A DNA stretch of 48,216 nt from Salpingoeca rosetta (GCA_033442325.1 JAWQFM010000033.1:189372-237587), one strand, 5' to 3'. Positions 11,225 through 39,639 are shown, numbered from the stretch's first letter. A program made the numbers and translations. The notes: generated by a model not told the origin, from the letters alone.

Positions 11225-12705
11225 TCACATGAGGGCACAGCAGCCACCGCCCTGCTTCCTCTGAGCGTCGGCCGCAGCACGATATTCGTCAAAGCGCTGC
11301 ATGAACAGTCGCGCGTGCCCGAGACGAACACCCATCTCCTGCAACCGTTCCACGCTCACATCTCCAGCATCAACCAGCACAGTCAGCACGTCAAAGGTTG
11401 TAGCGCCGACGTGCGCAAGGGCACCTTCCACATGCATGCGCAGCTTGTTGACCGACAGCCACTTCTCAAACTCCGCGTCAAACACGATGCCAGCTTCCTG
11501 CTCGTTGTGCGTGTGTTGGGGGGGGGGGAAGAGTGAGGATGTGAAGACAAGCATACAATGGGGCGTTGCGTGAGGCCTTTCACCACATGAGCATACACAC
11601 GTGGGTACATGCACATACGCACCTGCACTGGCACACACGCGCAAACACACACCTGAAGTGAGGGTGACTGGGGCACTTGTGGGGACTGTGGTGTGGCCGG
11701 TTCAGACGGCTGCATCGGCTGGGAGGACTGCAAGCAACAGAAACACAAAGGACGCGATGTGTGAGTCCGTGAAGCAGGAAGGTGAGTCACAGCGAGACAT
11801 GAGATGCATAACACAGCAGTATTGCGCACGAAGGCGAAAACAACGCATGTACACACACACGAACACGCACACAATACCGTACCTGAGTGGATCGACGTGC
11901 AGTTGCTGGCTCCAGTGCTGCTTGTTCTGCACTCCTGGCAGAAGCGACGACCTGGCGCACCTTCTCTGCAATGTCGCGCAGCTGCAGAGTGCGGTCAACA
12001 GTGGCGTCCAATACAATGACGGCGTCGATGTCAAACAGCGACAGCACCGCCTCACGTACAGGTTTGTGGTTTTGTGGCGGCGGCAGATGCAGTACTTGTG
12101 TAAAGTACTGGTCGAGGGCTGATGCTGTCGCCTTGCTCACAACATCTGGTAACTTCATCGTCAGCTGCTTCATGCGGTCAAACGAGTCGTACTCGCCCAT
12201 CTCGGCGCGGCTCGTGCTGCCGCTGTCGCTTGTGTTGTGCCACACGCTGCCAACAACCACGGGCACGACACGGCGAAGCCGGATCAGGTCTGCGGCCTCT
12301 CCCTCACCTCCCCCTCCGTGCTTGCGCTGGTGCTCGTGCAACGCCAGCATCGTCATCCACTCCAGCAGCACGTTGTCGCAGTAGTCGCTGTGCTGCAGCT
12401 GCCTCATCTGCATGATGGTGGCAGCAGAGACGATGGGGCAGGCCACCAGACTCAGCCCAATCGCCGTCATGAACGACAGCTTGAAGTTGAGGCCCGTCTC
12501 CAGGTTGTTGGCGTCCAGAAACGCAACCAGGTTGCGCTGCTCCAAGCGCGGATGCAGCGCCATCACCAGCCCACTGCTGGCGCGTTGCCTGTGGTGATCG
12601 TGGTGGTGGAGGAGGGAGAAGGGGGATGTGAGGTGAAATGTTGTGCTGCAGCAGTGGTGGTGGGTGGGTAGGTGGGTGGAAGCGACGAACACACCACATA
12701 CTCAC

Positions 12706-12773
<68 letters not shown>

Positions 12774-14534
12774 GTCTCACCGGTAGCTGATGAAGACGTC
12801 ATACTTGTCCTGCAGGCCGAGAACGGGCAAGAGAGGGCCATACTTGGCGATCAGGTCATCGGGTGACAGCAGCTGTTCGTCTACCCACATGTCCTGCTTG
12901 CGCTTGTGGTGGTGCAGCACGTCCTCGAAGAACAGCAGCGTCTTGTCGTCAAATGGCAGCAGCAGGCTGCTCTTCAGCTCAGGGTAGCGCTCTCTTATGG
13001 CCTCGCTGATCATGGTGTGCAGCATGTGCAGCATGGCGCGTGGCTGCGCACTTGTGATCTTCATCTTGATGCCGCCAACAGCCGGCACAAGCTGCAGCTC
13101 AAGCTTGGTCGACTCCATGAAGCAGACGGCGTGGGTGCGGCTCAGCTTGGGCTGCTGGGATGCGCCGTGCTGTGCGTGCACCATCACGTGTGCCAGCACA
13201 ACGGTGAACAACCCCTCGGGCAGGAACGACGCGTGCCGTGCGTCTCGAGCACACACGCTCGCACTTCGCTTGAATTGCTTCAGGCTGAAGGTGACGTAGG
13301 CTGTCTTCTCCTCGTGCCCAAGATACGGGTTGACCTGCTGTGCTGCCGTCGTGCTAAGTGACACGGATGCCATCTCGCTGTTGTTGTGGCGAATCGTCAT
13401 TGGCAGGATGGCTGGGACCAGGTAATGCTGCTGCTCTGGACTGTTGCCCTTGCTGCCCTTGGCTGTAGCGTGGGCACCGTGGCCAGAGTTGGCGCGAGCA
13501 AGTGCCGTGCGGCTATCCACCAGCTTGGGTGGAGAGTACTGGATGCACAGCCCGTACTGCATCATGAGGCGCAGGAACGGCATCACCAAGTTGCTGTCCA
13601 CGTCCCCCCACAGTACATCAAGCAGACGGCGGTGCAGGATGCCGCGGTCAACAAGGTCGTCCCACAGCTGCGCGCCAACGGCCCTCGCCTCGCCATCCCG
13701 CACATCGTGATGCAGGTCAAAGTTGCGGATGACGCGCGTCATCATGTCCACCGCCCACTGCGGGCTAAGGATCACATAGTCCTCCATGCCTGGCACGCTG
13801 TCGTAGTACAGGACCATGGAATACAGGTGCAGGAACTGGAGGCAGGTCCGTGTCTCCTCACGTGTACGCAGCCCACATGTGCGCGCAATCTGGACCACCT
13901 CGTCAAACGTGAGCAGCGGCCGCTCCTCGTCGCGGGCGATGGCGTTGAGCTTGTCGTAGAGGTGGAGGTAGGGCACAGCCACCTCCTGGCTCACGTATTC
14001 CTGCGCTAAGGCTGTGGAGGAGATGGTCTGGCGCAGGTCCTGGATCATGGGATCATCGATGGACTTGGTGTTGTCAACGGGCCAGAACCACAGCCCGTGC
14101 TTGTCGTTGTGGATGACGCAAGGGAAAGCGGGGTTGTGGCGCAGGCGACTGTAAATGTCACGCGAGATCTGCTCATGCTCCTTCCGCTCGTTGATCCTGT
14201 CAGCGAAGGTGCCCACGATGAGGACGGGTGCGCCCTTTGCGTGGAGGTGAAGGGAGGAGAGCCAGTGCTCCATAAACTCCCACGCCTCTGTCCGCTTGCT
14301 CTCGTCTTGGTGTAACAGGTCCTCCATCGAGAACACCAGCAGGTACACGGCGTACCTGTTACGGGATGATTGGGAGTGGTGGGAAGGTGTGGGTGGGGGG
14401 AGCAAAAATGGGGTTGTTGAGGGGAGCGGTGATCAGCACACATACATACGCACACGCACACACGCACACACGCACACACGCACACACGCACACACACACA
14501 CACACAAGAACACACACACACACACACACACAAG

Positions 14535-14568
<34 letters not shown>

Positions 14569-15234
14569 CACAGTGACTCACCTGGTGAGGAAGAAAGGGT
14601 GGAAGACGTAGAAGGTGGACTGGCCGCCCAGGTCAAAGATCTTGAAGGAGACCTGCATCTTGCCTTCGCCAATTGTCGCATCAAAGTCCATGTCCTTGAT
14701 TGCCTTCTCCACCTCCTCCTTCGAAACGGATGGTGTGGTCACGGCAACGACGTCAGCATCGTCGTCACCAACGTCGGCGTGGCTGGAAGCTGGGTGCTGC
14801 TCCTTTGCTGCAGGCGTTGCTGTGGAGGCATCACGACCTGCAGCAGGTGCAGGCACGGCTGCGGTGGACGCCTTGTCGGATGATGGAGCGGAAGTTGTGG
14901 ATGTGCCATGGCCCTTCTTGCACTGCTTCTTGTCATCCGTCCTGGCCTGCTTCTTGGCCTGCTTCTTGGCCTCCTCGTGCTGTTGCTCGGTAACACGGGT
15001 GGCGTGCTGCGCCTGTGCCTTTGCTGACGCGCGCTTCAGCTCCTCGTCCACGCCGGCCTCGCGTGCCATCGCCGTGCCAACGAGACTGCGGATGAACTCG
15101 GACGTGCTCTGGTCGCTCTCCTGCACGAGATGTGGAACGGGGTGATGTGTGTAAGTGCTGGTGAACAATGACATAAGGTGGTGATTGACCAGGTGTTGGT
15201 GGAAGCAGGTGTTGGTACACGGTGGATGCACATA

Positions 15235-15284
<50 letters not shown>

Positions 15285-16890
15285 TCCAGTCGCACACTTC
15301 CATGGTGTGGACGGTGACCCTCATGTCGTTGGTGGTGGCGCCGAGTGTGGAGTGCTGCTGCTTGTTGAACGGCTTGCCCTGAAGCGAGTCCATAAGCGTC
15401 GTCTTGCCCGCGCGGCCCTGGCCAGAGACGCCCATCTTGGCTCGCCCCGCCATGTGCGTGTCGGAACGCTCCGCAATGTCCATCATGCGCGCCTGCACCG
15501 CCTCTCTGTGCACCTGTGTACATCGGCGGGGCATTGGCGATGGTGAGGAATGAATGGATGATGGTGGATGATGGCGGATGATGGCGTGCAAGACATTAAT
15601 TCGGACGTGTGTTGCAAGAGGTTAACACGAACAAATGCCTGAAATGGTGCGGCATGCCAAAGGTCAATGTGTTTCGTGTGCACGTACATGCTCAGCGTCT
15701 GTTGCGTCAGAAGCAGCGGTCGGATGCTGCTCTTGCCCGAGCCCTAAGATGGCGGTGATGTCGTGGAAATTGCGTTTTTGTGCGACCATGAACGGCGTTC
15801 CGCCCTGTGGAAGTTGGAGTGTGGAAATGGTGAGCAAGCACAGAAATAATGTTGACGGTTCAAGGAAGGTGCACCCATGATACATGCGGCCGCACCCTGG
15901 TGTTCGTGATGGAAACGTCTGCGCCTTCTGCGAGCAGCAGCTTCACAATGGCAGGCTGGTTGTGCCTGCAGGCAACGTGCAGCGGCGTGTCGCCCTGTGG
16001 GAACAAGGAGAATGGAAGGGCCAAGTGGTGAGAGTAGCAGTTGAGCCATTTTCATTGAACGATATCAGCAGCCCATGCACAGGAACATGTACACACAGAC
16101 ACAGTCACATACATGAGCACACACACACACACACACACACACGCTCACACACACTTGTTCATCCTGGTGGTTGACATGTGCATGGTCTTGCTTGATGAGG
16201 GAAGTGACAGCTGCGACGTCGCCATTCTTGCAGGCACCGAGCAGGCGCTCGTGTGGTTGCTGCTCGTTGTCTGCAGTTGCTTCTCGATCGGCGTGCATGC
16301 TCGTATGCTGTCGCATCTTCTGTTCTAGCGCCTCGTTGAAGGCGGTTTCGCTCCCATCGTCATTGGACCTGTGCTCACACGCAGACACACGAGATGAAGT
16401 ACAATCAGCAGAACACAGAACGCTGCAGTGCAAGGGGAGAAAGAGATTGTATCTATGCGACTGTGCAAATATGCATGCGAGAAGGAACGGCAGTAGAGCC
16501 AGGTTGGAGTGAAGCCGTGGTACTTCGAAACAACCATCACTGCGTTGCCCATGAGCAACCCCTTGTGGCGAAGCCATTCATGAGAGTTAGCTCGTTCGAA
16601 GACAACAAGGTAATCCAATGGTGCGCAAGGGCATTGCACGCTTTGCGGCGCTCAATTTAACCATACGCGAGTGCGTCTTCGTTCGGTCCCCCATTCAAGC
16701 GTGCTTCAATTAGCTTCAATAGCTGCGCGTTGCGACGGCGTTCGTGTGTAGTGGAGGTGACCCTTGAGTAGTCGACAAGTGGGGCCCCTGCACAGGCAAA
16801 GTCCAAGCTTGAACCGGCCGGTGGCTGCATGTATACAGAGAGAGTGTGTGTTTGTGAGTGAGTGTGTGAATGAGCGTGTGAGAGAGTATG

Positions 16891-16933
<43 letters not shown>

Positions 16934-17567
16934 TGTGTGTGTGTGTGTGTGACGATGAGAGTGTGCTGAAATTGAAATGAGGTGTTGAAAGTTTGTGTTG
17001 GAGCGGGTTTGGACTTGAAAAAAACATGTGGTTGCTGAAAGCAGAAGCGAGAACAAGATGAAGCGATAGCAAGATAGCAAGATGAGGCCACAACCACACA
17101 GCTGACTTCTTTGCGCGTCGTCTTGATGAAGAAAATAGGCTTGCGCAGCTTGTGGGCGTAGTGCAGCTCCGCGCGGCAAGAGGCTGACTCACTATACTCT
17201 GGTGAGTAGTCGATGATCACGAATGCAGACTCCTGAATGCCCTCGCCCTGCGTCTCAAGGATCGACTGAACGATACACGGACATGTCGCACGACACAACA
17301 CAACGTAACACACACACATACACACACACATACACACACGCGCGCGTTCAGCTGTTGTCAATCGTAATCAGGACAAGCCTCTAAGCCTGACAAGCAGCCA
17401 ACGCAAACACGTGTCCAGGAATACAGTACGAGTGCAATGTCACTGACCTTTCCGTCCAATTGGCTGTCGTGCCACACTTCGTAACCTGCGTGGGTGAGGG
17501 CTTGCTCCAACTTCATGAAGAGCCTTTTGTGAGGCCAACAGTAGGAAAGGAAACACTTGCGATTCAT
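11225..17567 (-). CDS. ROCO-family protein TIR-ANK(x3)-Roc-COR-TIR-SAM-like-CaaX, 12 exons, ~1421 aa
   Basis: Exons: 17567-17448, 17265-17107, 16824-16667, 16368-16155, 15994-15896, 15804-15688, 15513-15283, 15120-14582, 14355-12781, 12588-11883, 11727-11653, 11497-11225; all GT-AG and phase-consistent. TIR1 CFLSYCW...[32 protein letters not shown]. Roc GQGRAGKTT / HSTLG / FDLGGQ / [22 protein letters not shown]...VILSPQW. TIR2 YDVFISYR...FLDANNL...DNVLLEW. Ends CCALM. Confidence 0.85.
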
Positions 17568-37824: not shown

Positions 37825-39639
37825 CTCTCTCCCTCTCTCTCTCTCTCTCTTCGTCCCTTTGGTTGCCGAACCGTGCATAGCGATGTTTGAGCTCCTTGCT
37901 GCTGATGCTGCTCTGATCATACCAGAGGTAGTGGCCACATTCCCCTAACTTCAGCACAAGCTGACTTCGAAGCTGCAAACCATCAAGACAACAGTGCAGC
38001 AATACCATCGGACTGCAGATGAGCGTGTGTCATATCGCAGGCCATACTACGTCGACATACAACAAGTGTTTGCTCCTTACCTTGGCATCAGCGGACATGA
38101 AGTTGCGAGTGACAATGATCACGAGTGTCGCACTGGAAGTGGTCGTTCGCCGCAGCAATTGAGACAGATACGAAGCGTCAACTGTTTGATCCAGCACGCC
38201 AGTGTTGGGAGGTTTGGCGTCACGATCCCACAAGTCATCCACCCAGTCTGGTCGCATTGCTGCCAGCACGTGGCCACACTTTGGCTCGAGGTTCAGCAGT
38301 TCCACACAGCAATTGTGTGAGGAAATGTACTCGTCGGAGAGAAACACAACACCGGCCTTTGCGGAAGCCATGGCCAGTGCACACGTGTCCTCAATGCGGT
38401 GGCCCGGGAGGATGTTTCGAATGTCAATCCAGCAGACATCGCCAAAGAAGCAGTGAAAGGATTTTCGGGCGATCCGTTTGGTCCAATTACTCCATGAGTA
38501 GCTGATGGCGAAGGTTCCGGGCTGCATACCCGCTGTTAAGGCTTTCAGCATACGAGTTGGTGTCTTGGCAGTGAAGTGCTGTCGCGACCTACAAGAGGGC
38601 AAGAAGAGCAATTGCATTAGTTCGGTGGCAGAAAATACAAGATGCACACACACACGCCGACACACACACAAAACGCAGAACACCAAAGGTTCGAACATAA
38701 AGAACTTGCCAAATGAGGTGGAAGGTGACGGCAGAGCACAGAGACATGACGATTGTGGACTTGATCGCCGCGGGCTTCGAGACATCTTGGACAAACACAA
38801 GTGTGTCGTCAAAACAGTTGTCGTCCTTCAGTTTACCACCCTTTGTGCCCTGCGAATTCAGTGTGTTTTCACCAAACACAATGCACTCAAAGATGAGTCA
38901 AGGGGGCCAGCCGTGCAGCAAAATTCCAAACCACGAACAAGCTCAATAGATCAGTCCACCATCTACAATAGCAAACGCACCACGACCACCCAGGCGAGGA
39001 GCACAAAGGTCCAAGCAAGTCCGTACACGATGACTGCCAACCGAACACGCAGAAAGTAACAAAACAAACAAGAAGGTGCGTGTCGTGTGGCAAACGTGTT
39101 TTATATCAGTTGCTTCATATGGCTGTGTGTGCTTGTGTTCCCCATTCCTCGGCTCACGCAAACCAATGACCCAGAAGCAAACGCGCTCTTGTCCCATATC
39201 ATCGCGTGGCATGTTCAGGCAAATACCTGCACCTACATGTCAGCTTGGGGCTGAGCATAAATCTGCGGACAGTGGCGACCCAGAATGGCAACCAAGAGTG
39301 TCCGGACGAATCTTCCAGGCGATCCAACAGATTTGTGAGACGGCGCCTTCTCTGCTGCTCTTGTTCGTCGAGCTTGTTGTTGCGTTCGCGAGAGGGCGAA
39401 GAATGGGGGTCCATGTCGATCACCTCTGCCCAATCGTCCTCAGTTGCGTCATCATTGGATGCAGTGCGTGCATGTGTCCGTCGTGAAAAAGAAGAGCCTC
39501 GCTGTTGTCCCTGTCCTCCTTCTCTTTCTCTCTCTTCTCTGGTCACGCCCAGCTCCAATTCTTCGCCAGCAAGGGAAGACTCAGCTTGATCATCATCACC
39601 ACCGTCCCACCCAAGCAGCGGCTGGGCGAGGTCACTCAT
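35718..39639 (-). CDS. multipass membrane TIR-domain protein, ~13 exons, ~803 aa
   Basis: Exons: 39639-39237, 39033-38981, 38849-38710 (GC donor), 38588-38081, 37972-37872, 37679-37562, 37447-37405, 37311-37099, 37033-36740, 36648-36442, 36304-36214, 36093-36010, 35874-35718. TIR motifs FAISYSW, CWIDIRNILPG, VVFLSDEYISSHNCCVEL. TM helices on both sides of the TIR. Some junctions are non-canonical, so exact boundaries are less certain. Confidence 0.65.

What the first reader, a model, noticed from the sequence alone, without database searches (positions are those of the whole stretch)
11225..17567. Double-TIR ROCO GTPase: TIR-ANK-Roc-COR-TIR-SAM with no kinase or LRR
Seen: a Roc-COR core flanked by two TIR domains, each keeping a Glu at the alphaC position (SCRAEL; DNVLLEW). 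Known: that Glu is catalytic in NADase TIRs (SARM1, plant and bacterial TIRs), and Roc-COR dimerisation depends on nucleotide state. Inference: a GTP-switched oligomerising TIR enzyme for innate immunity or cell death. I do not know this architecture from described ROCO proteins.
Basis: partly seen in the sequence, partly recalled or inferred. Interest (0 to 1): 0.75.

Follow-up and report, generated by a model that had tools for sequence, protein, structure and literature searches.

The report
Choanoflagellate Roco GTPase with two TIRs
This Salpingoeca rosetta gene belongs to a large family of GTPase-switched, TIR-enzyme proteins built like immune receptors, and here three exons missing from the public annotation probably replace the usual leucine-rich-repeat head with a second TIR domain.

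Summary
There is no LRR and no kinase.

The locus is S. rosetta PTSG_10437. The public model (1345 aa) starts at 16577 and omits the N-terminal TIR. That annotated start looks intronic. A phase-2 acceptor at 16368, conserved in paralogs, needs an upstream exon, and TIR exon 3 offers an in-frame GT donor. That donor is weak and I found no RNA evidence. I put the single-gene, 12-exon, 1421-codon model at about 0.6.

The C-terminal TIR is 66% identical to the TIR of paralog PTSG_12359, which a 2026 preprint reports to make cADPR in a Glu-dependent way. The Glu motif is identical.

The N-terminal TIR is a three-exon cassette related to two ARM-TIR-SAM genes and appears to be under purifying selection.

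The layout is not unique. Double-TIR Roco proteins occur in Paulinella micropora and in two environmental assemblies.

This scan has noted the Roco-TIR-SAM family many times at other loci of this genome. None of the notes I retrieved describes a double-TIR member. An immune role is untested.

The parts
17448..17567 (-). Exon 1 (40 codons): ATG start and the first strand, helix and strand of the N-terminal TIR (CFLSY ... YEVWHD). Not in the public annotation.
   Evidence: Pfam TIR_2 21.5 bits, profile 2-32. Local TIR profile positions 4-38. Codon-usage score is positive only in this frame. Donor is AAG|GTCAGT.
17107..17265 (-). Exon 2 (53 codons): core of the N-terminal TIR. The candidate catalytic Glu of SCRAEL is the codon at 17169-17167.
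   Evidence: Pfam TIR_2 22.6 bits, profile 41-88. 70-72% identical to the equivalent exon of two ARM-TIR-SAM genes. The Glu aligns with the conserved Glu of TLR1/TLR6 TIRs and of Roco TIRs. The nearest ESM Atlas clusters are TIR_2.
16667..16824 (-). Exon 3 (52 codons plus 2 nt): C-terminal part of the N-terminal TIR. Proposed phase-2 donor is GC|GTATGG. If this donor is not used, a TAA stop follows at 16660-16658.
   Evidence: Homologous to exon 3 of L014 and L015. Reading of the sequence. Donor strength is at the 4th percentile of family donors. No Pfam hit on its own.
16369..16577 (-). Stretch annotated as the N-terminus of PTSG_10437. I judge it to be part of intron 3.
   Evidence: Codon-usage score is -0.45 per codon and GC3 is 0.45, the same as confirmed introns. 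Homology to paralogs starts only at 16367.
16155..16368 (-). Exon 4: linker and first ankyrin repeat. It is entered through a phase-2 acceptor (cacag|G).
   Evidence: The same acceptor and phase are found in paralogs PTSG_12865 and PTSG_13152. Exon map.
15896..15994 (-). Exon 5: second ankyrin repeat.
   Evidence: Pfam Ank 41.7 bits. Exon map.
15688..15804 (-). Exon 6: third ankyrin repeat and linker.
   Evidence: Ank_2 49.6 bits over residues 113-194 of P0013. Exon map.
15283..15513 (-). Exon 7: start of Roc, with the P-loop GQGRAGKT.
   Evidence: Pfam Roc 24 bits on the exon alone; Roc 55.6 bits in P0013.
14582..15120 (-). Exon 8: low-complexity insert of about 150 residues inside Roc, then the DLGGQ (G3) motif.
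   Evidence: Pfam Roc profile 51-78 at the end of the exon. P0013 sequence.
12781..14355 (-). Exon 9: end of Roc, COR-A, COR-B, and the first strand of the C-terminal TIR (DVFISYR).
   Evidence: COR-A 68 bits and COR-B 18.9 bits. 86-90% identical to paralogs, with dN/dS 0.13-0.17.
11883..12588 (-). Exon 10: C-terminal TIR with a long insert. The catalytic-type Glu of CDNVLLEW is the codon at 12362-12360 (E1071 of PTSG_10437).
   Evidence: 66% identical to the cADPR-producing TIR of PTSG_12359/F2UB80, whose Glu is E1118. TIR_2 19.8 bits in P0013.
11653..11727 (-). Exon 11: Ser/Pro/Gln-rich linker.
   Evidence: Exon map against P0013.
11225..11497 (-). Exon 12: SAM domain, basic stretch, CaaX-type end (GGGCCALM) and TGA stop.
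   Evidence: AlphaFold2 pLDDT 89.6 with five helices. Best structural matches are SAM domains: Z 6-7.3, rmsd about 2 A over 60-75 residues. About eight paralogs share CaaX-type ends.

Best explanation
**What it is.** One 12-exon gene on the minus strand (17567-11225) of Salpingoeca rosetta. It encodes a Roco protein of about 1421 residues with no kinase and no LRR. The domain order is TIR1, three ankyrin repeats, Roc GTPase, COR-A/COR-B, TIR2, SAM, CaaX.

**Family and origin.** It belongs to the large S. rosetta (LRR)-ANK-Roc-COR-TIR-SAM family. Here the usual LRR head has been replaced by a three-exon TIR cassette. The cassette is related to the TIR of two ARM-TIR-SAM genes elsewhere in the genome.

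**Proposed mechanism (inferred).**
1. The Roc-COR module acts as a nucleotide-dependent switch that controls self-association.
2. The SAM domain and a prenylated C-terminus concentrate the protein into oligomers at a membrane.
3. Assembled TIR2 domains cleave NAD+ and make cADPR, as reported for the TIR of a paralog.
4. TIR1 sits where the family normally has its sensor. It is either a second NAD+-cleaving domain or a homotypic docking module for other TIR proteins, such as the ARM-TIR-SAM relatives.

**Shown versus inferred.** Shown: domain content, family membership, origin of the cassette, and conservation of both Glu residues. Inferred: the exon 3 to exon 4 splice, catalysis by either TIR of this protein, GTP control, lipidation, and any immune role.
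For: **Identity of the locus.** P0013 (PTSG_10437) matches the window's exons at 99.6-100%. The record GCA_000188695.1 annotates nothing between 18274 and 16577.

**Domains.** (Pfam; SAM fold; CaaX end).

**TIR2.** It is 66% identical to the tested TIR of PTSG_12359/F2UB80, and the Glu motif is identical.

**TIR1 is a live coding sequence.**
- Codon usage is positive in frame for all three exons.
- The rough branch dN/dS is about 0.3.
- It shares splice positions with L014 and L015.
- The Glu is conserved.

**Fusion of TIR1 to the Roco body.**
- The annotated N-terminus looks like intron.
- The phase-2 acceptor at 16368 is conserved in paralogs, and paralog homology begins there.
- Exon 3 has a phase-2 GT donor six bases before its stop.
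- Proposed introns of 182, 282 and 298 nt fall inside the family range of 91-366 nt.
- Heads differ among paralogs: LRR, Rab plus ANK, long ANK arrays.
- An uninterrupted open frame from an ENA assembly encodes TIR-ANK-Roc-COR-TIR. Paulinella micropora and a Logan contig encode similar double-TIR Roco proteins, with Glu kept in both TIRs.
Against: - I could reach no transcript evidence.
- The public model omits the TIR exons.
- The proposed exon 3 donor CGC|GTATGG scores at the 4th percentile of 50 family donors. About 26% of all GT sites on this strand score at least as high.
- Phase compatibility alone has about a one-in-three chance of arising by accident.
- Without that splice, exon 3 ends in TAA and gives a plausible stand-alone TIR protein of 146 residues.
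- Each TIR1 Pfam hit is below threshold on its own, and exon 3 has no family hit.
- TIR1 lacks the Trp usually found four residues before the Glu. The same is true of the active paralog TIR.
- The fold prediction for the TIR2 exon was of low confidence (pLDDT 55) and uninformative.
Confidence: 0.6

Rival explanations
1. There are two adjacent genes on the same strand. The first is a small stand-alone TIR protein of 146 residues (exons 1-3, stop at 16660-16658). The second is a separate ANK-Roc-COR-TIR-SAM-CaaX gene that starts at the annotated ATG (16577), at an internal Met of exon 4, or in an unrecognised short first exon.
For: - The public annotation starts the Roco gene at 16577 and has no gene over the TIR exons.
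- An in-frame TAA lies six bases after the proposed donor.
- The donor is weak.
- TIR-only proteins are common in many genomes (general knowledge).
Against: - Only 83 nt separate the TAA from the annotated ATG.
- The annotated N-terminal 69 codons look intronic by codon usage.
- The acceptor at 16368 is conserved in position and phase with paralogs and needs an upstream exon.
- Double-TIR Roco proteins exist as single open frames elsewhere.
Confidence: 0.27
2. The TIR exons are a leftover of a partial duplication of an ARM-TIR-SAM gene. They are non-coding or lie in the 5' untranslated region, and the functional protein is only ANK-Roc-COR-TIR-SAM.
For: - The cassette lacks the ARM and SAM parts of its relatives.
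- It is not annotated.
Against: - All three exons are open, with GT-AG borders kept at the relatives' positions and a start codon placed just before the first strand.
- Codon usage is coding-like in frame only.
- At a branch dS of roughly 0.8 the rough dN/dS is about 0.3, and 34 of 53 exon 2 residues, including the Glu, are invariant across the three copies.
Confidence: 0.08
3. This is a rival on mechanism only. The gene is fused as proposed, but TIR1 is a non-catalytic adaptor or bait. It docks onto other TIR proteins, or is targeted by a pathogen factor, and thereby takes over the sensor role of the missing LRR. Only TIR2 is an enzyme.
For: - TIR1 occupies the position that holds LRR, Rab or ANK heads in paralogs.
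- It is 60-63% identical to the TIR of two ARM-TIR-SAM proteins, which would favour homotypic contacts.
- It has Ser where many NADase TIRs have Trp, four residues before the Glu.
Against: - The Glu is invariant in TIR1 and its relatives.
- Both TIRs keep the Glu in the double-TIR Roco proteins of other organisms.
- The active paralog TIR also lacks that Trp.
Confidence: 0.3

Closest known systems
S. rosetta LRR-ANK-Roc-COR-TIR-SAM paralogs, for example PTSG_12359 (UniProt F2UB80), whose TIR is reported to make cADPR (preprint 10.64898/2026.04.20.719644), and PTSG_12865, the nearest paralog
   Same: - The ANK-Roc-COR-TIR-SAM body is shared.
- Exon 9 is 86-90% identical to the paralogs.
- TIR2 is 66% identical to the tested TIR, with the same CDNVLLEW Glu motif.
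- Exon structure is shared, including the phase-2 intron before the first ANK exon.
   Different: - There are no LRR exons. A TIR cassette stands in their place.
- The SAM exon belongs to a CaaX-ended sub-type shared with only about eight copies.
- The N-terminal TIR is missing from the public model of this gene.
Double-TIR Roco proteins in public predicted proteomes: P0176 (ENA ERZ27280195), P0067 (Paulinella micropora g23839.t1), P0076 (Logan SRR9661224)
   Same: - The domain order is the same: TIR-(ANK)-Roc-COR-TIR-(SAM).
- Both TIRs keep the Glu.
- The N-terminal TIR of P0076 resembles TIR1 exon 2 (E = 1e-5).
   Different: - They are only 25-28% identical over Roc-COR.
- Their C-terminal TIRs are not of the S. 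rosetta TIR2 type.
- The shared layout is therefore probably a recurrent assembly, not orthology.
- None is named or studied.
SARM1 / TIR-1 (ARM-SAM-SAM-TIR NADase)
   Same: - A TIR with a catalytic-type Glu is joined to SAM-mediated oligomerisation.
- SARM1 and TIR-1 SAM domains are among the structural matches of the SAM model (Z 5.7-6.4).
- The relatives of TIR1 are ARM-TIR-SAM proteins.
   Different: - This gene has no ARM domain.
- It has one SAM, placed after the TIR.
- A Roc-COR GTPase is present, instead of an NAD+/NMN-sensing ARM.
- It is not a member of the family.
Roco proteins in general (LRRK2, MASL1/MFHAS1, Chlorobium tepidum Roco, brown-alga ROCO candidate receptors)
   Same: - The Roc-COR tandem is present, with P-loop and DxxGQ motifs.
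- Repeat domains lie N-terminal to Roc.
- The family is lineage-expanded and exon-shuffled, like the brown-alga ROCOs (PMC11378527, title and abstract).
   Different: - There is no kinase and no LRR.
- The output domains are TIR, SAM and a lipid anchor.
- The Roc domain carries an insert of about 150 residues.
TIR plus ROC-COR proteins of Aplysia californica (PMC9334734)
   Same: TIR and Roc-COR occur in one predicted protein. The authors interpret this as possible GTPase-linked TIR signalling.
   Different: Those are described as TLR-like or MyD88-like proteins with LRR, death, EF-hand or Mbt domains. No member with a TIR on both sides of Roc-COR is described there.
Plant TNL and other NLR/STAND immune receptors
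   Same: The logic is similar: an NTPase switch, oligomerisation, and a TIR NADase output.
   Different: The switch is a Ras-like Roc-COR, not an NB-ARC or NACHT STAND ATPase. This is an analogy of design, not homology of the core.

Membership tests
Roco (Roc-COR) GTPases | Ras-like Roc domain with P-loop and DxxGQ motifs | tested here: met
   Pfam Roc 55.6 bits and Ras 29.2 bits in P0013. GQGRAGKT and DLGGQ are read in the sequence.
Roco (Roc-COR) GTPases | COR-A directly after Roc | tested here: met
   COR-A 68 bits on the exon and 65.6 bits in P0013; cut-off 35.3.
Roco (Roc-COR) GTPases | COR-B after COR-A | tested here: inconclusive
   COR-B 17-19 bits at the expected place; cut-off 27.
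Roco (Roc-COR) GTPases | Guanine-nucleotide binding and nucleotide-dependent dimerisation | not testable with these tools
   Needs purified protein.
S. rosetta (LRR)-ANK-Roc-COR-TIR-SAM paralog family | Close sequence kinship of the Roc-COR-TIR body and a shared exon structure | tested here: met
   86-90% identity in exon 9 and 78-82% in the TIR2 exon. Same intron positions. At least 53 COR-A matches in the genome.
S. rosetta (LRR)-ANK-Roc-COR-TIR-SAM paralog family | LRR head before the ankyrin repeats | tested here: not met
   No LRR Pfam hit in any open frame from 17681 to 16068. The LRR parts of the paralogs find nothing in the window. Other paralogs also lack LRRs, so this feature is usual for the family but not universal.
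TIR domain (N-terminal copy, TIR1) | Sequence match to TIR family models | tested here: inconclusive
   TIR_2 21.5 and 22.6 bits on exons 1 and 2. The hits are collinear, but each is below the 28-bit cut-off. I did not score the joined exons. The 63%-identical relative on G000:C11 scores 31.1 and 25.7 bits. A local TIR profile gives 21.2 and 36.9 bits. The nearest ESM Atlas clusters are TIR_2.
TIR domain (N-terminal copy, TIR1) | Glu at the catalytic position at the start of helix C | tested here: met
   The Glu of SCRAEL aligns with the conserved Glu of TLR1/TLR6 TIRs and of the Roco TIR profile. It is invariant in the three copies.
TIR domain (C-terminal copy, TIR2) | Homology to a TIR with demonstrated activity, and to TIR models | tested here: met
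   66% identity (145 of 219) to the TIR of PTSG_12359/F2UB80. That TIR scores TIR_2 33.3 bits and TIR 21.5 bits, both over cut-off. This copy itself scores 19.8 bits.
TIR domain (C-terminal copy, TIR2) | Catalytic Glu | tested here: met
   The CDNVLLEW motif is identical. E1071 here corresponds to E1118 of F2UB80, which the preprint lists as the catalytic residue.
TIR NADase / cyclase enzymes | NAD+ cleavage or cADPR production by this protein's own TIRs | not testable with these tools
   Only a paralog's TIR has been assayed, in the preprint.
SAM domain | Five-helix SAM fold | tested here: met
   pLDDT 89.6. 20 of the first 21 structural matches are SAM domains, with Z 5.8-7.3. These Z values are modest in absolute terms.
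SAM domain | Match to SAM sequence models | tested here: not met
   No Pfam SAM hit on the exon. The profile search of PDB sequences found nothing. The single-sequence hit to the EphB2 SAM has E = 0.46.
CaaX-prenylated proteins | Cys-aliphatic-aliphatic-X at the very C-terminus | tested here: met
   The open frame ends in CCALM followed by the stop. Lipidation itself is untested.
SARM1 | ARM-SAM-SAM-TIR order with an autoinhibitory ARM domain | tested here: not met
   No ARM hit in the gene. It has one SAM, placed after the TIR.
NLR / STAND receptors | NB-ARC or NACHT STAND NTPase core | tested here: not met
   Pfam finds only Roc/Ras-type GTPase models.

The most novel reading that the evidence does not exclude
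The N-terminal TIR, copied from an ARM-TIR-SAM (SARM-like) gene, serves as the sensing or docking head of a Roco switch. Heterotypic TIR contacts, with the ARM-TIR-SAM proteins or between TIR1 and TIR2 of neighbouring protomers, would be gated by the Roc-COR nucleotide state. This would couple two TIR signalling systems at a membrane in a close relative of animals. It would be a GTPase-gated TIR-to-TIR relay, distinct from STAND-based TIR receptors.
Probability: 0.15. Interest if true: 0.75.

Novelty: new variant of a known kind. Interest (0 to 1): 0.45.

Why it matters
Roco-TIR-SAM proteins are a large, fast-diversifying family in choanoflagellates, the closest living relatives of animals. 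One family TIR has now been reported to make cADPR.

This locus shows that the family's head can be swapped for a second TIR taken from a SARM-like gene. It also shows that the same TIR-Roco-TIR layout has arisen in unrelated protists, which points to a recurrent functional design and not an annotation accident.

The finding corrects a public gene model. It also gives a natural test case for two questions: whether two TIRs on one GTPase scaffold act as two enzymes or as an enzyme plus an adaptor, and whether a Ras-like switch can stand in for the STAND ATPase of classical TIR immune receptors.

The value is moderate. The family and its enzyme type are already known, and the one-transcript claim still needs RNA evidence.

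Tried and rejected
- **PDB sequence search, TIR2 exon.** Neither the single sequence nor the 23-paralog profile gave a meaningful hit.
- **PDB sequence search, SAM profile.** No hit.
- **AlphaFold2 on the TIR2 exon.** The exon lacks its first strand, which lies in exon 9. The model had pLDDT 55, and the Foldseek matches were noise. I do not use it.
- **Word search with the exon 2 / intron / exon 3 open frame.** It returned only microsatellite-driven noise, so it gave no transcript-derived protein covering the TIR1-ANK junction.
- **Own-genome search with the same open frame.** It failed twice on the server. The exon 1 search and the TIR_2 family search replaced it.
- **Census for an upstream TIR near other COR genes.** Of the COR-A loci that have a TIR_2 hit nearby, only this locus has the TIR upstream of COR. 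Exon-level sensitivity is low.
- **Bacterial or human origin.** Rejected. The locus has GT-AG introns and matches the S. rosetta record at 99.6-100%.
- **A kinase or LRR hidden in introns.** No hits.
- The length of 1421 codons is arithmetic on the coordinates. For this reason I ran neither an InterPro-style scan of the full spliced model nor an exact-sequence look-up of the 146-residue alternative.

Full report
**1. What is there**

The window is eukaryotic. Open frames are broken by GT-AG introns that carry (TG)n/(CA)n runs, and G+C is about 55%. The assembly has 55.4 Mb in 68 contigs.

A word search with the largest exon returned Salpingoeca rosetta proteins. P0013 (PTSG_10437, 1345 aa) maps onto the window's exons at 99.6-100% identity. 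The locus is therefore S. rosetta PTSG_10437, in an assembly that differs from GCA_000188695.1 by two residues in this gene.

**2. Domains, tested exon by exon and on the public protein**

| Domain | Evidence |
|---|---|
| TIR1 | TIR_2 21.5 bits on exon 1 (profile 2-32) and 22.6 bits on exon 2 (profile 41-88) |
| Ankyrin | Ank 41.7 bits |
| Roc | Fragments on two exons; 55.6 bits in P0013; P-loop GQGRAGKT and DLGGQ present |
| COR-A | 68 bits on the exon; 65.6 bits in P0013 |
| COR-B | 18.9 bits on the exon; 17.1 bits in P0013 (below threshold) |
| TIR2 | TIR_2 19.8 bits in P0013 at 990-1077 |
| LRR, kinase | None; LRR parts of paralogs find nothing in the window |

**3. The C-terminal TIR (TIR2)**

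A 2026 preprint (10.64898/2026.04.20.719644) reports cADPR production by eukaryotic TIRs, including one from S. rosetta. It states that activity depended on the catalytic Glu in all cases.

Its Table S4 lists that protein as F2UB80: 1352 aa, TIR at 1034-1255, Glu 1118. P0021 (PTSG_12359, 1352 aa) carries exactly that sequence at 1034.

The window's TIR2 is 66% identical to it (145 of 219 aligned residues). The motif CDNVLLEW is identical, so E1071 of PTSG_10437 corresponds to E1118. The Glu is kept in at least 90% of 23 paralog exons.

**4. SAM and the C-terminus**

Pfam and PDB sequence searches do not detect this domain. I aligned the C-terminal exons of 27 paralogs and predicted the structure from that alignment. 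The result is a confident five-helix model with pLDDT 89.6.

An all-against-representatives structural search returned SAM domains in 20 of the first 21 rows: CNK2, EphA5, Sans, p73, tankyrase, caskin and SARM1. Z scores were 5.8-7.3, with rmsd about 2 A over 60-75 residues. The Z values are modest, but the list is homogeneous and covers the whole domain.

The protein ends in GGGCCALM, a CaaX-type motif with an extra upstream Cys. About eight paralogs have similar ends: CCVLM, CCCLLM, CVLL, CMLI.

**5. The N-terminal TIR (TIR1)**

- **Reading.** It reads as three exons:
  - Exon 1, 17567-17448: starts with ATG and has the donor AAG|GTCAGT.
  - Exon 2, 17265-17107: holds SCRAEL.
  - Exon 3, 16824-16667.
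- **Relatives in the genome.** Its only relatives are the TIRs of two genes on G000:C11 and G000:C30. In each, a long ARM-like region precedes the TIR and a SAM-like stretch follows it.
- **Similarity.** Identity is 60-63% overall and 70-72% in exon 2. Both donors and the second acceptor sit at the same positions; the first acceptor is displaced by two codons.
- **Coding signal.** Codon usage is coding-like in frame for all three exons and intron-like between them.
- **Selection.** A three-way comparison gives a rough dN/dS of about 0.3 on the window's branch, at a branch dS of about 0.8 (139 codons, so imprecise).
- **The Glu.** The Glu of SCRAEL is invariant in the three copies. It aligns with the conserved Glu of solved TLR1/TLR6 TIRs and with the Glu of a TIR profile built from Roco proteins of other organisms. 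ESM Atlas neighbours of exon 2 are TIR_2 clusters.

My reading is that a genomic TIR cassette was copied from an ARM-TIR-SAM gene, acquired a start codon just before its first strand, and has been maintained.

**6. Is it one gene?**

The public model starts at 16577 and reads straight into exon 4. The record has no gene over the TIR exons.

*For fusion*
- The 69 annotated codons from 16577 to 16371 score as intron (-0.45 per codon, GC3 0.45, against +0.6 to +0.9 for real exons).
- Homology to paralogs begins at 16367.
- In PTSG_12865 and PTSG_13152 the homologous exon is entered through the same cacag|G acceptor, in phase 2.
- Exon 4 therefore needs an upstream exon that ends in phase 2. TIR exon 3 has a GT in phase 2 (GC|GTATGG) six bases before its TAA. 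This would give an in-frame junction.
- The proposed introns of 182, 282 and 298 nt lie within the family range of 91-366 nt.
- Heads vary among paralogs: LRR, Rab plus ANK, and long ANK arrays.

*Against fusion*
- The donor is weak. It sits at the 4th percentile of 50 family donors, and 26% of all GT sites score as high.
- Phase agreement alone has a one-in-three chance of arising by accident.
- I could reach no transcript data. One word search aimed at transcript-derived fragments returned only noise.

I put the single-gene model at about 0.6, two adjacent genes at about 0.27, and dead exons at under 0.1. The model has 12 exons, 4263 nt and 1421 codons.

The length comes from coordinate arithmetic only.

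**7. Is the architecture new?**

A full HMMER search with exon 9 found 1709 cluster representatives at E <= 1e-3.

Taxa named for Roc-COR-TIR proteins:
- Salpingoeca infusionum
- Mylnosiga fluctuans
- Mallomonas annulata
- Cymbomonas tetramitiformis
- Hondaea fermentalgiana
- Paulinella micropora

Three representatives have a TIR on both sides of Roc-COR:

| Protein | Source | Layout |
|---|---|---|
| P0176 | ENA ERZ27280195; one uninterrupted frame | TIR 14-160, ANK 178-312, Roc, COR-A, TIR 1327-1484 |
| P0067 | Paulinella micropora | TIR-Roc-COR-TIR-SAM |
| P0076 | Logan SRR9661224 | TIR-Roc-COR-TIR |

Both TIRs keep the Glu in all three. These proteins are only 25-28% identical to the window's protein over Roc-COR. 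The shared layout therefore looks recurrent, not inherited.

In the literature I searched:
- TIR plus ROC-COR proteins are noted for Aplysia (PMC9334734).
- The legend to the preprint's Figure 3 lists Roc, COR and LRR among the domains drawn for the tested proteins.
- I found no description of a double-TIR Roco.

Within S. rosetta this appears to be the only family member with this head.

**8. How it most likely works**

1. The Roc-COR tandem acts as a nucleotide switch. Established Roco biology links nucleotide state to dimerisation; see for example the titles of PMC11052575 and PMC4721548.
2. The SAM domain, as in SARM1, and a lipidated C-terminus would concentrate and oligomerise the protein at a membrane.
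3. TIR enzymes need self-association to form active sites (general knowledge of SARM1, plant TNLs and bacterial TIRs). Assembly would therefore switch on TIR2, whose type makes cADPR.
4. TIR1 stands where the sensor normally is. It is either a second enzyme (Glu kept, purifying selection) or a homotypic docking or bait module for the ARM-TIR-SAM relatives.

Every step of this mechanism is inferred. Only the enzyme type of TIR2 has indirect experimental backing.

**9. Verdict**

- **Observation.** Confirmed.
- **Interpretation.** Partly supported.
- **Novelty.** This is a new variant (TIR-headed, double-TIR, CaaX-ended) of a known kind (Roco-TIR-SAM proteins). The gene model correction is likely but unproven.
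- **Earlier notes.** The scan has noted the family many times at other loci of this genome. None of the notes I retrieved describes a double-TIR member.

Noticed in passing
window 16369-16577 (-): The first 70 residues of the public protein PTSG_10437 appear to be translated intron. They are hydrophobic and low in complexity, have intron-like codon usage, and have no homology to any paralog.
   Followed up: yes
window 11225-11250 (-); loci L017-L024: The protein ends in a CaaX-type motif (CCALM). About eight paralogs end in CCALM, CCVLM, CCCLLM, CVLL or CMLI. Most others end in ...KKCDVDSSV-like tails without CaaX. This suggests a membrane-anchored sub-family.
   Followed up: partly
L014 (G000:C11:108000-116000) and L015 (G000:C30:706000-714000): Two S. 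rosetta genes encode a long ARM-like region followed by a three-exon TIR with a conserved Glu, then a SAM-like stretch. This is SARM1-like domain content in a different order. They are the source type of the N-terminal TIR cassette.
   Followed up: partly
P0036 (PTSG_02681, 1593 aa): A close paralog has Roc, COR-A and a TIR2-type domain (671-788), followed by a PNP_UDP_1 phosphorylase-superfamily domain (1270-1492, 26.5 bits). This looks like another effector variant of the family.
   Followed up: no
P0051 (Hondaea fermentalgiana GBG34516.1, 1621 aa): One predicted protein contains two Roc-COR-TIR units in tandem, each TIR with the Glu. It could be a true duplication or two merged gene models.
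   Followed up: no
window 14582-15120 (-): The Roc domain carries an insert of about 150 residues, low in complexity and rich in Lys, Ala, Gln and Ser, between the switch I region and DLGGQ. The insert is shared with paralogs such as PTSG_12359.
   Followed up: no
window 38297-38512 (-): A separate TIR_2 match (31.1 bits, over cut-off) lies in another gene of the window. It corresponds to another first-stage note about a TIR between transmembrane blocks.
   Followed up: no
window 11600-17400, most introns: Nearly every intron of the gene holds a (TG)n/(CA)n microsatellite. These translate as CVCVCV or THTHTH runs and draw spurious word matches in protein searches.
   Followed up: no
window exon 9 versus TIR1 exons: The Roco body is young relative to its paralogs (dS about 0.37). 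The TIR1 cassette is much more diverged from its relatives (dS 0.7-1.4). This could mean an old head on a body homogenised by gene conversion, or a cassette copied from a lost donor.
   Followed up: partly
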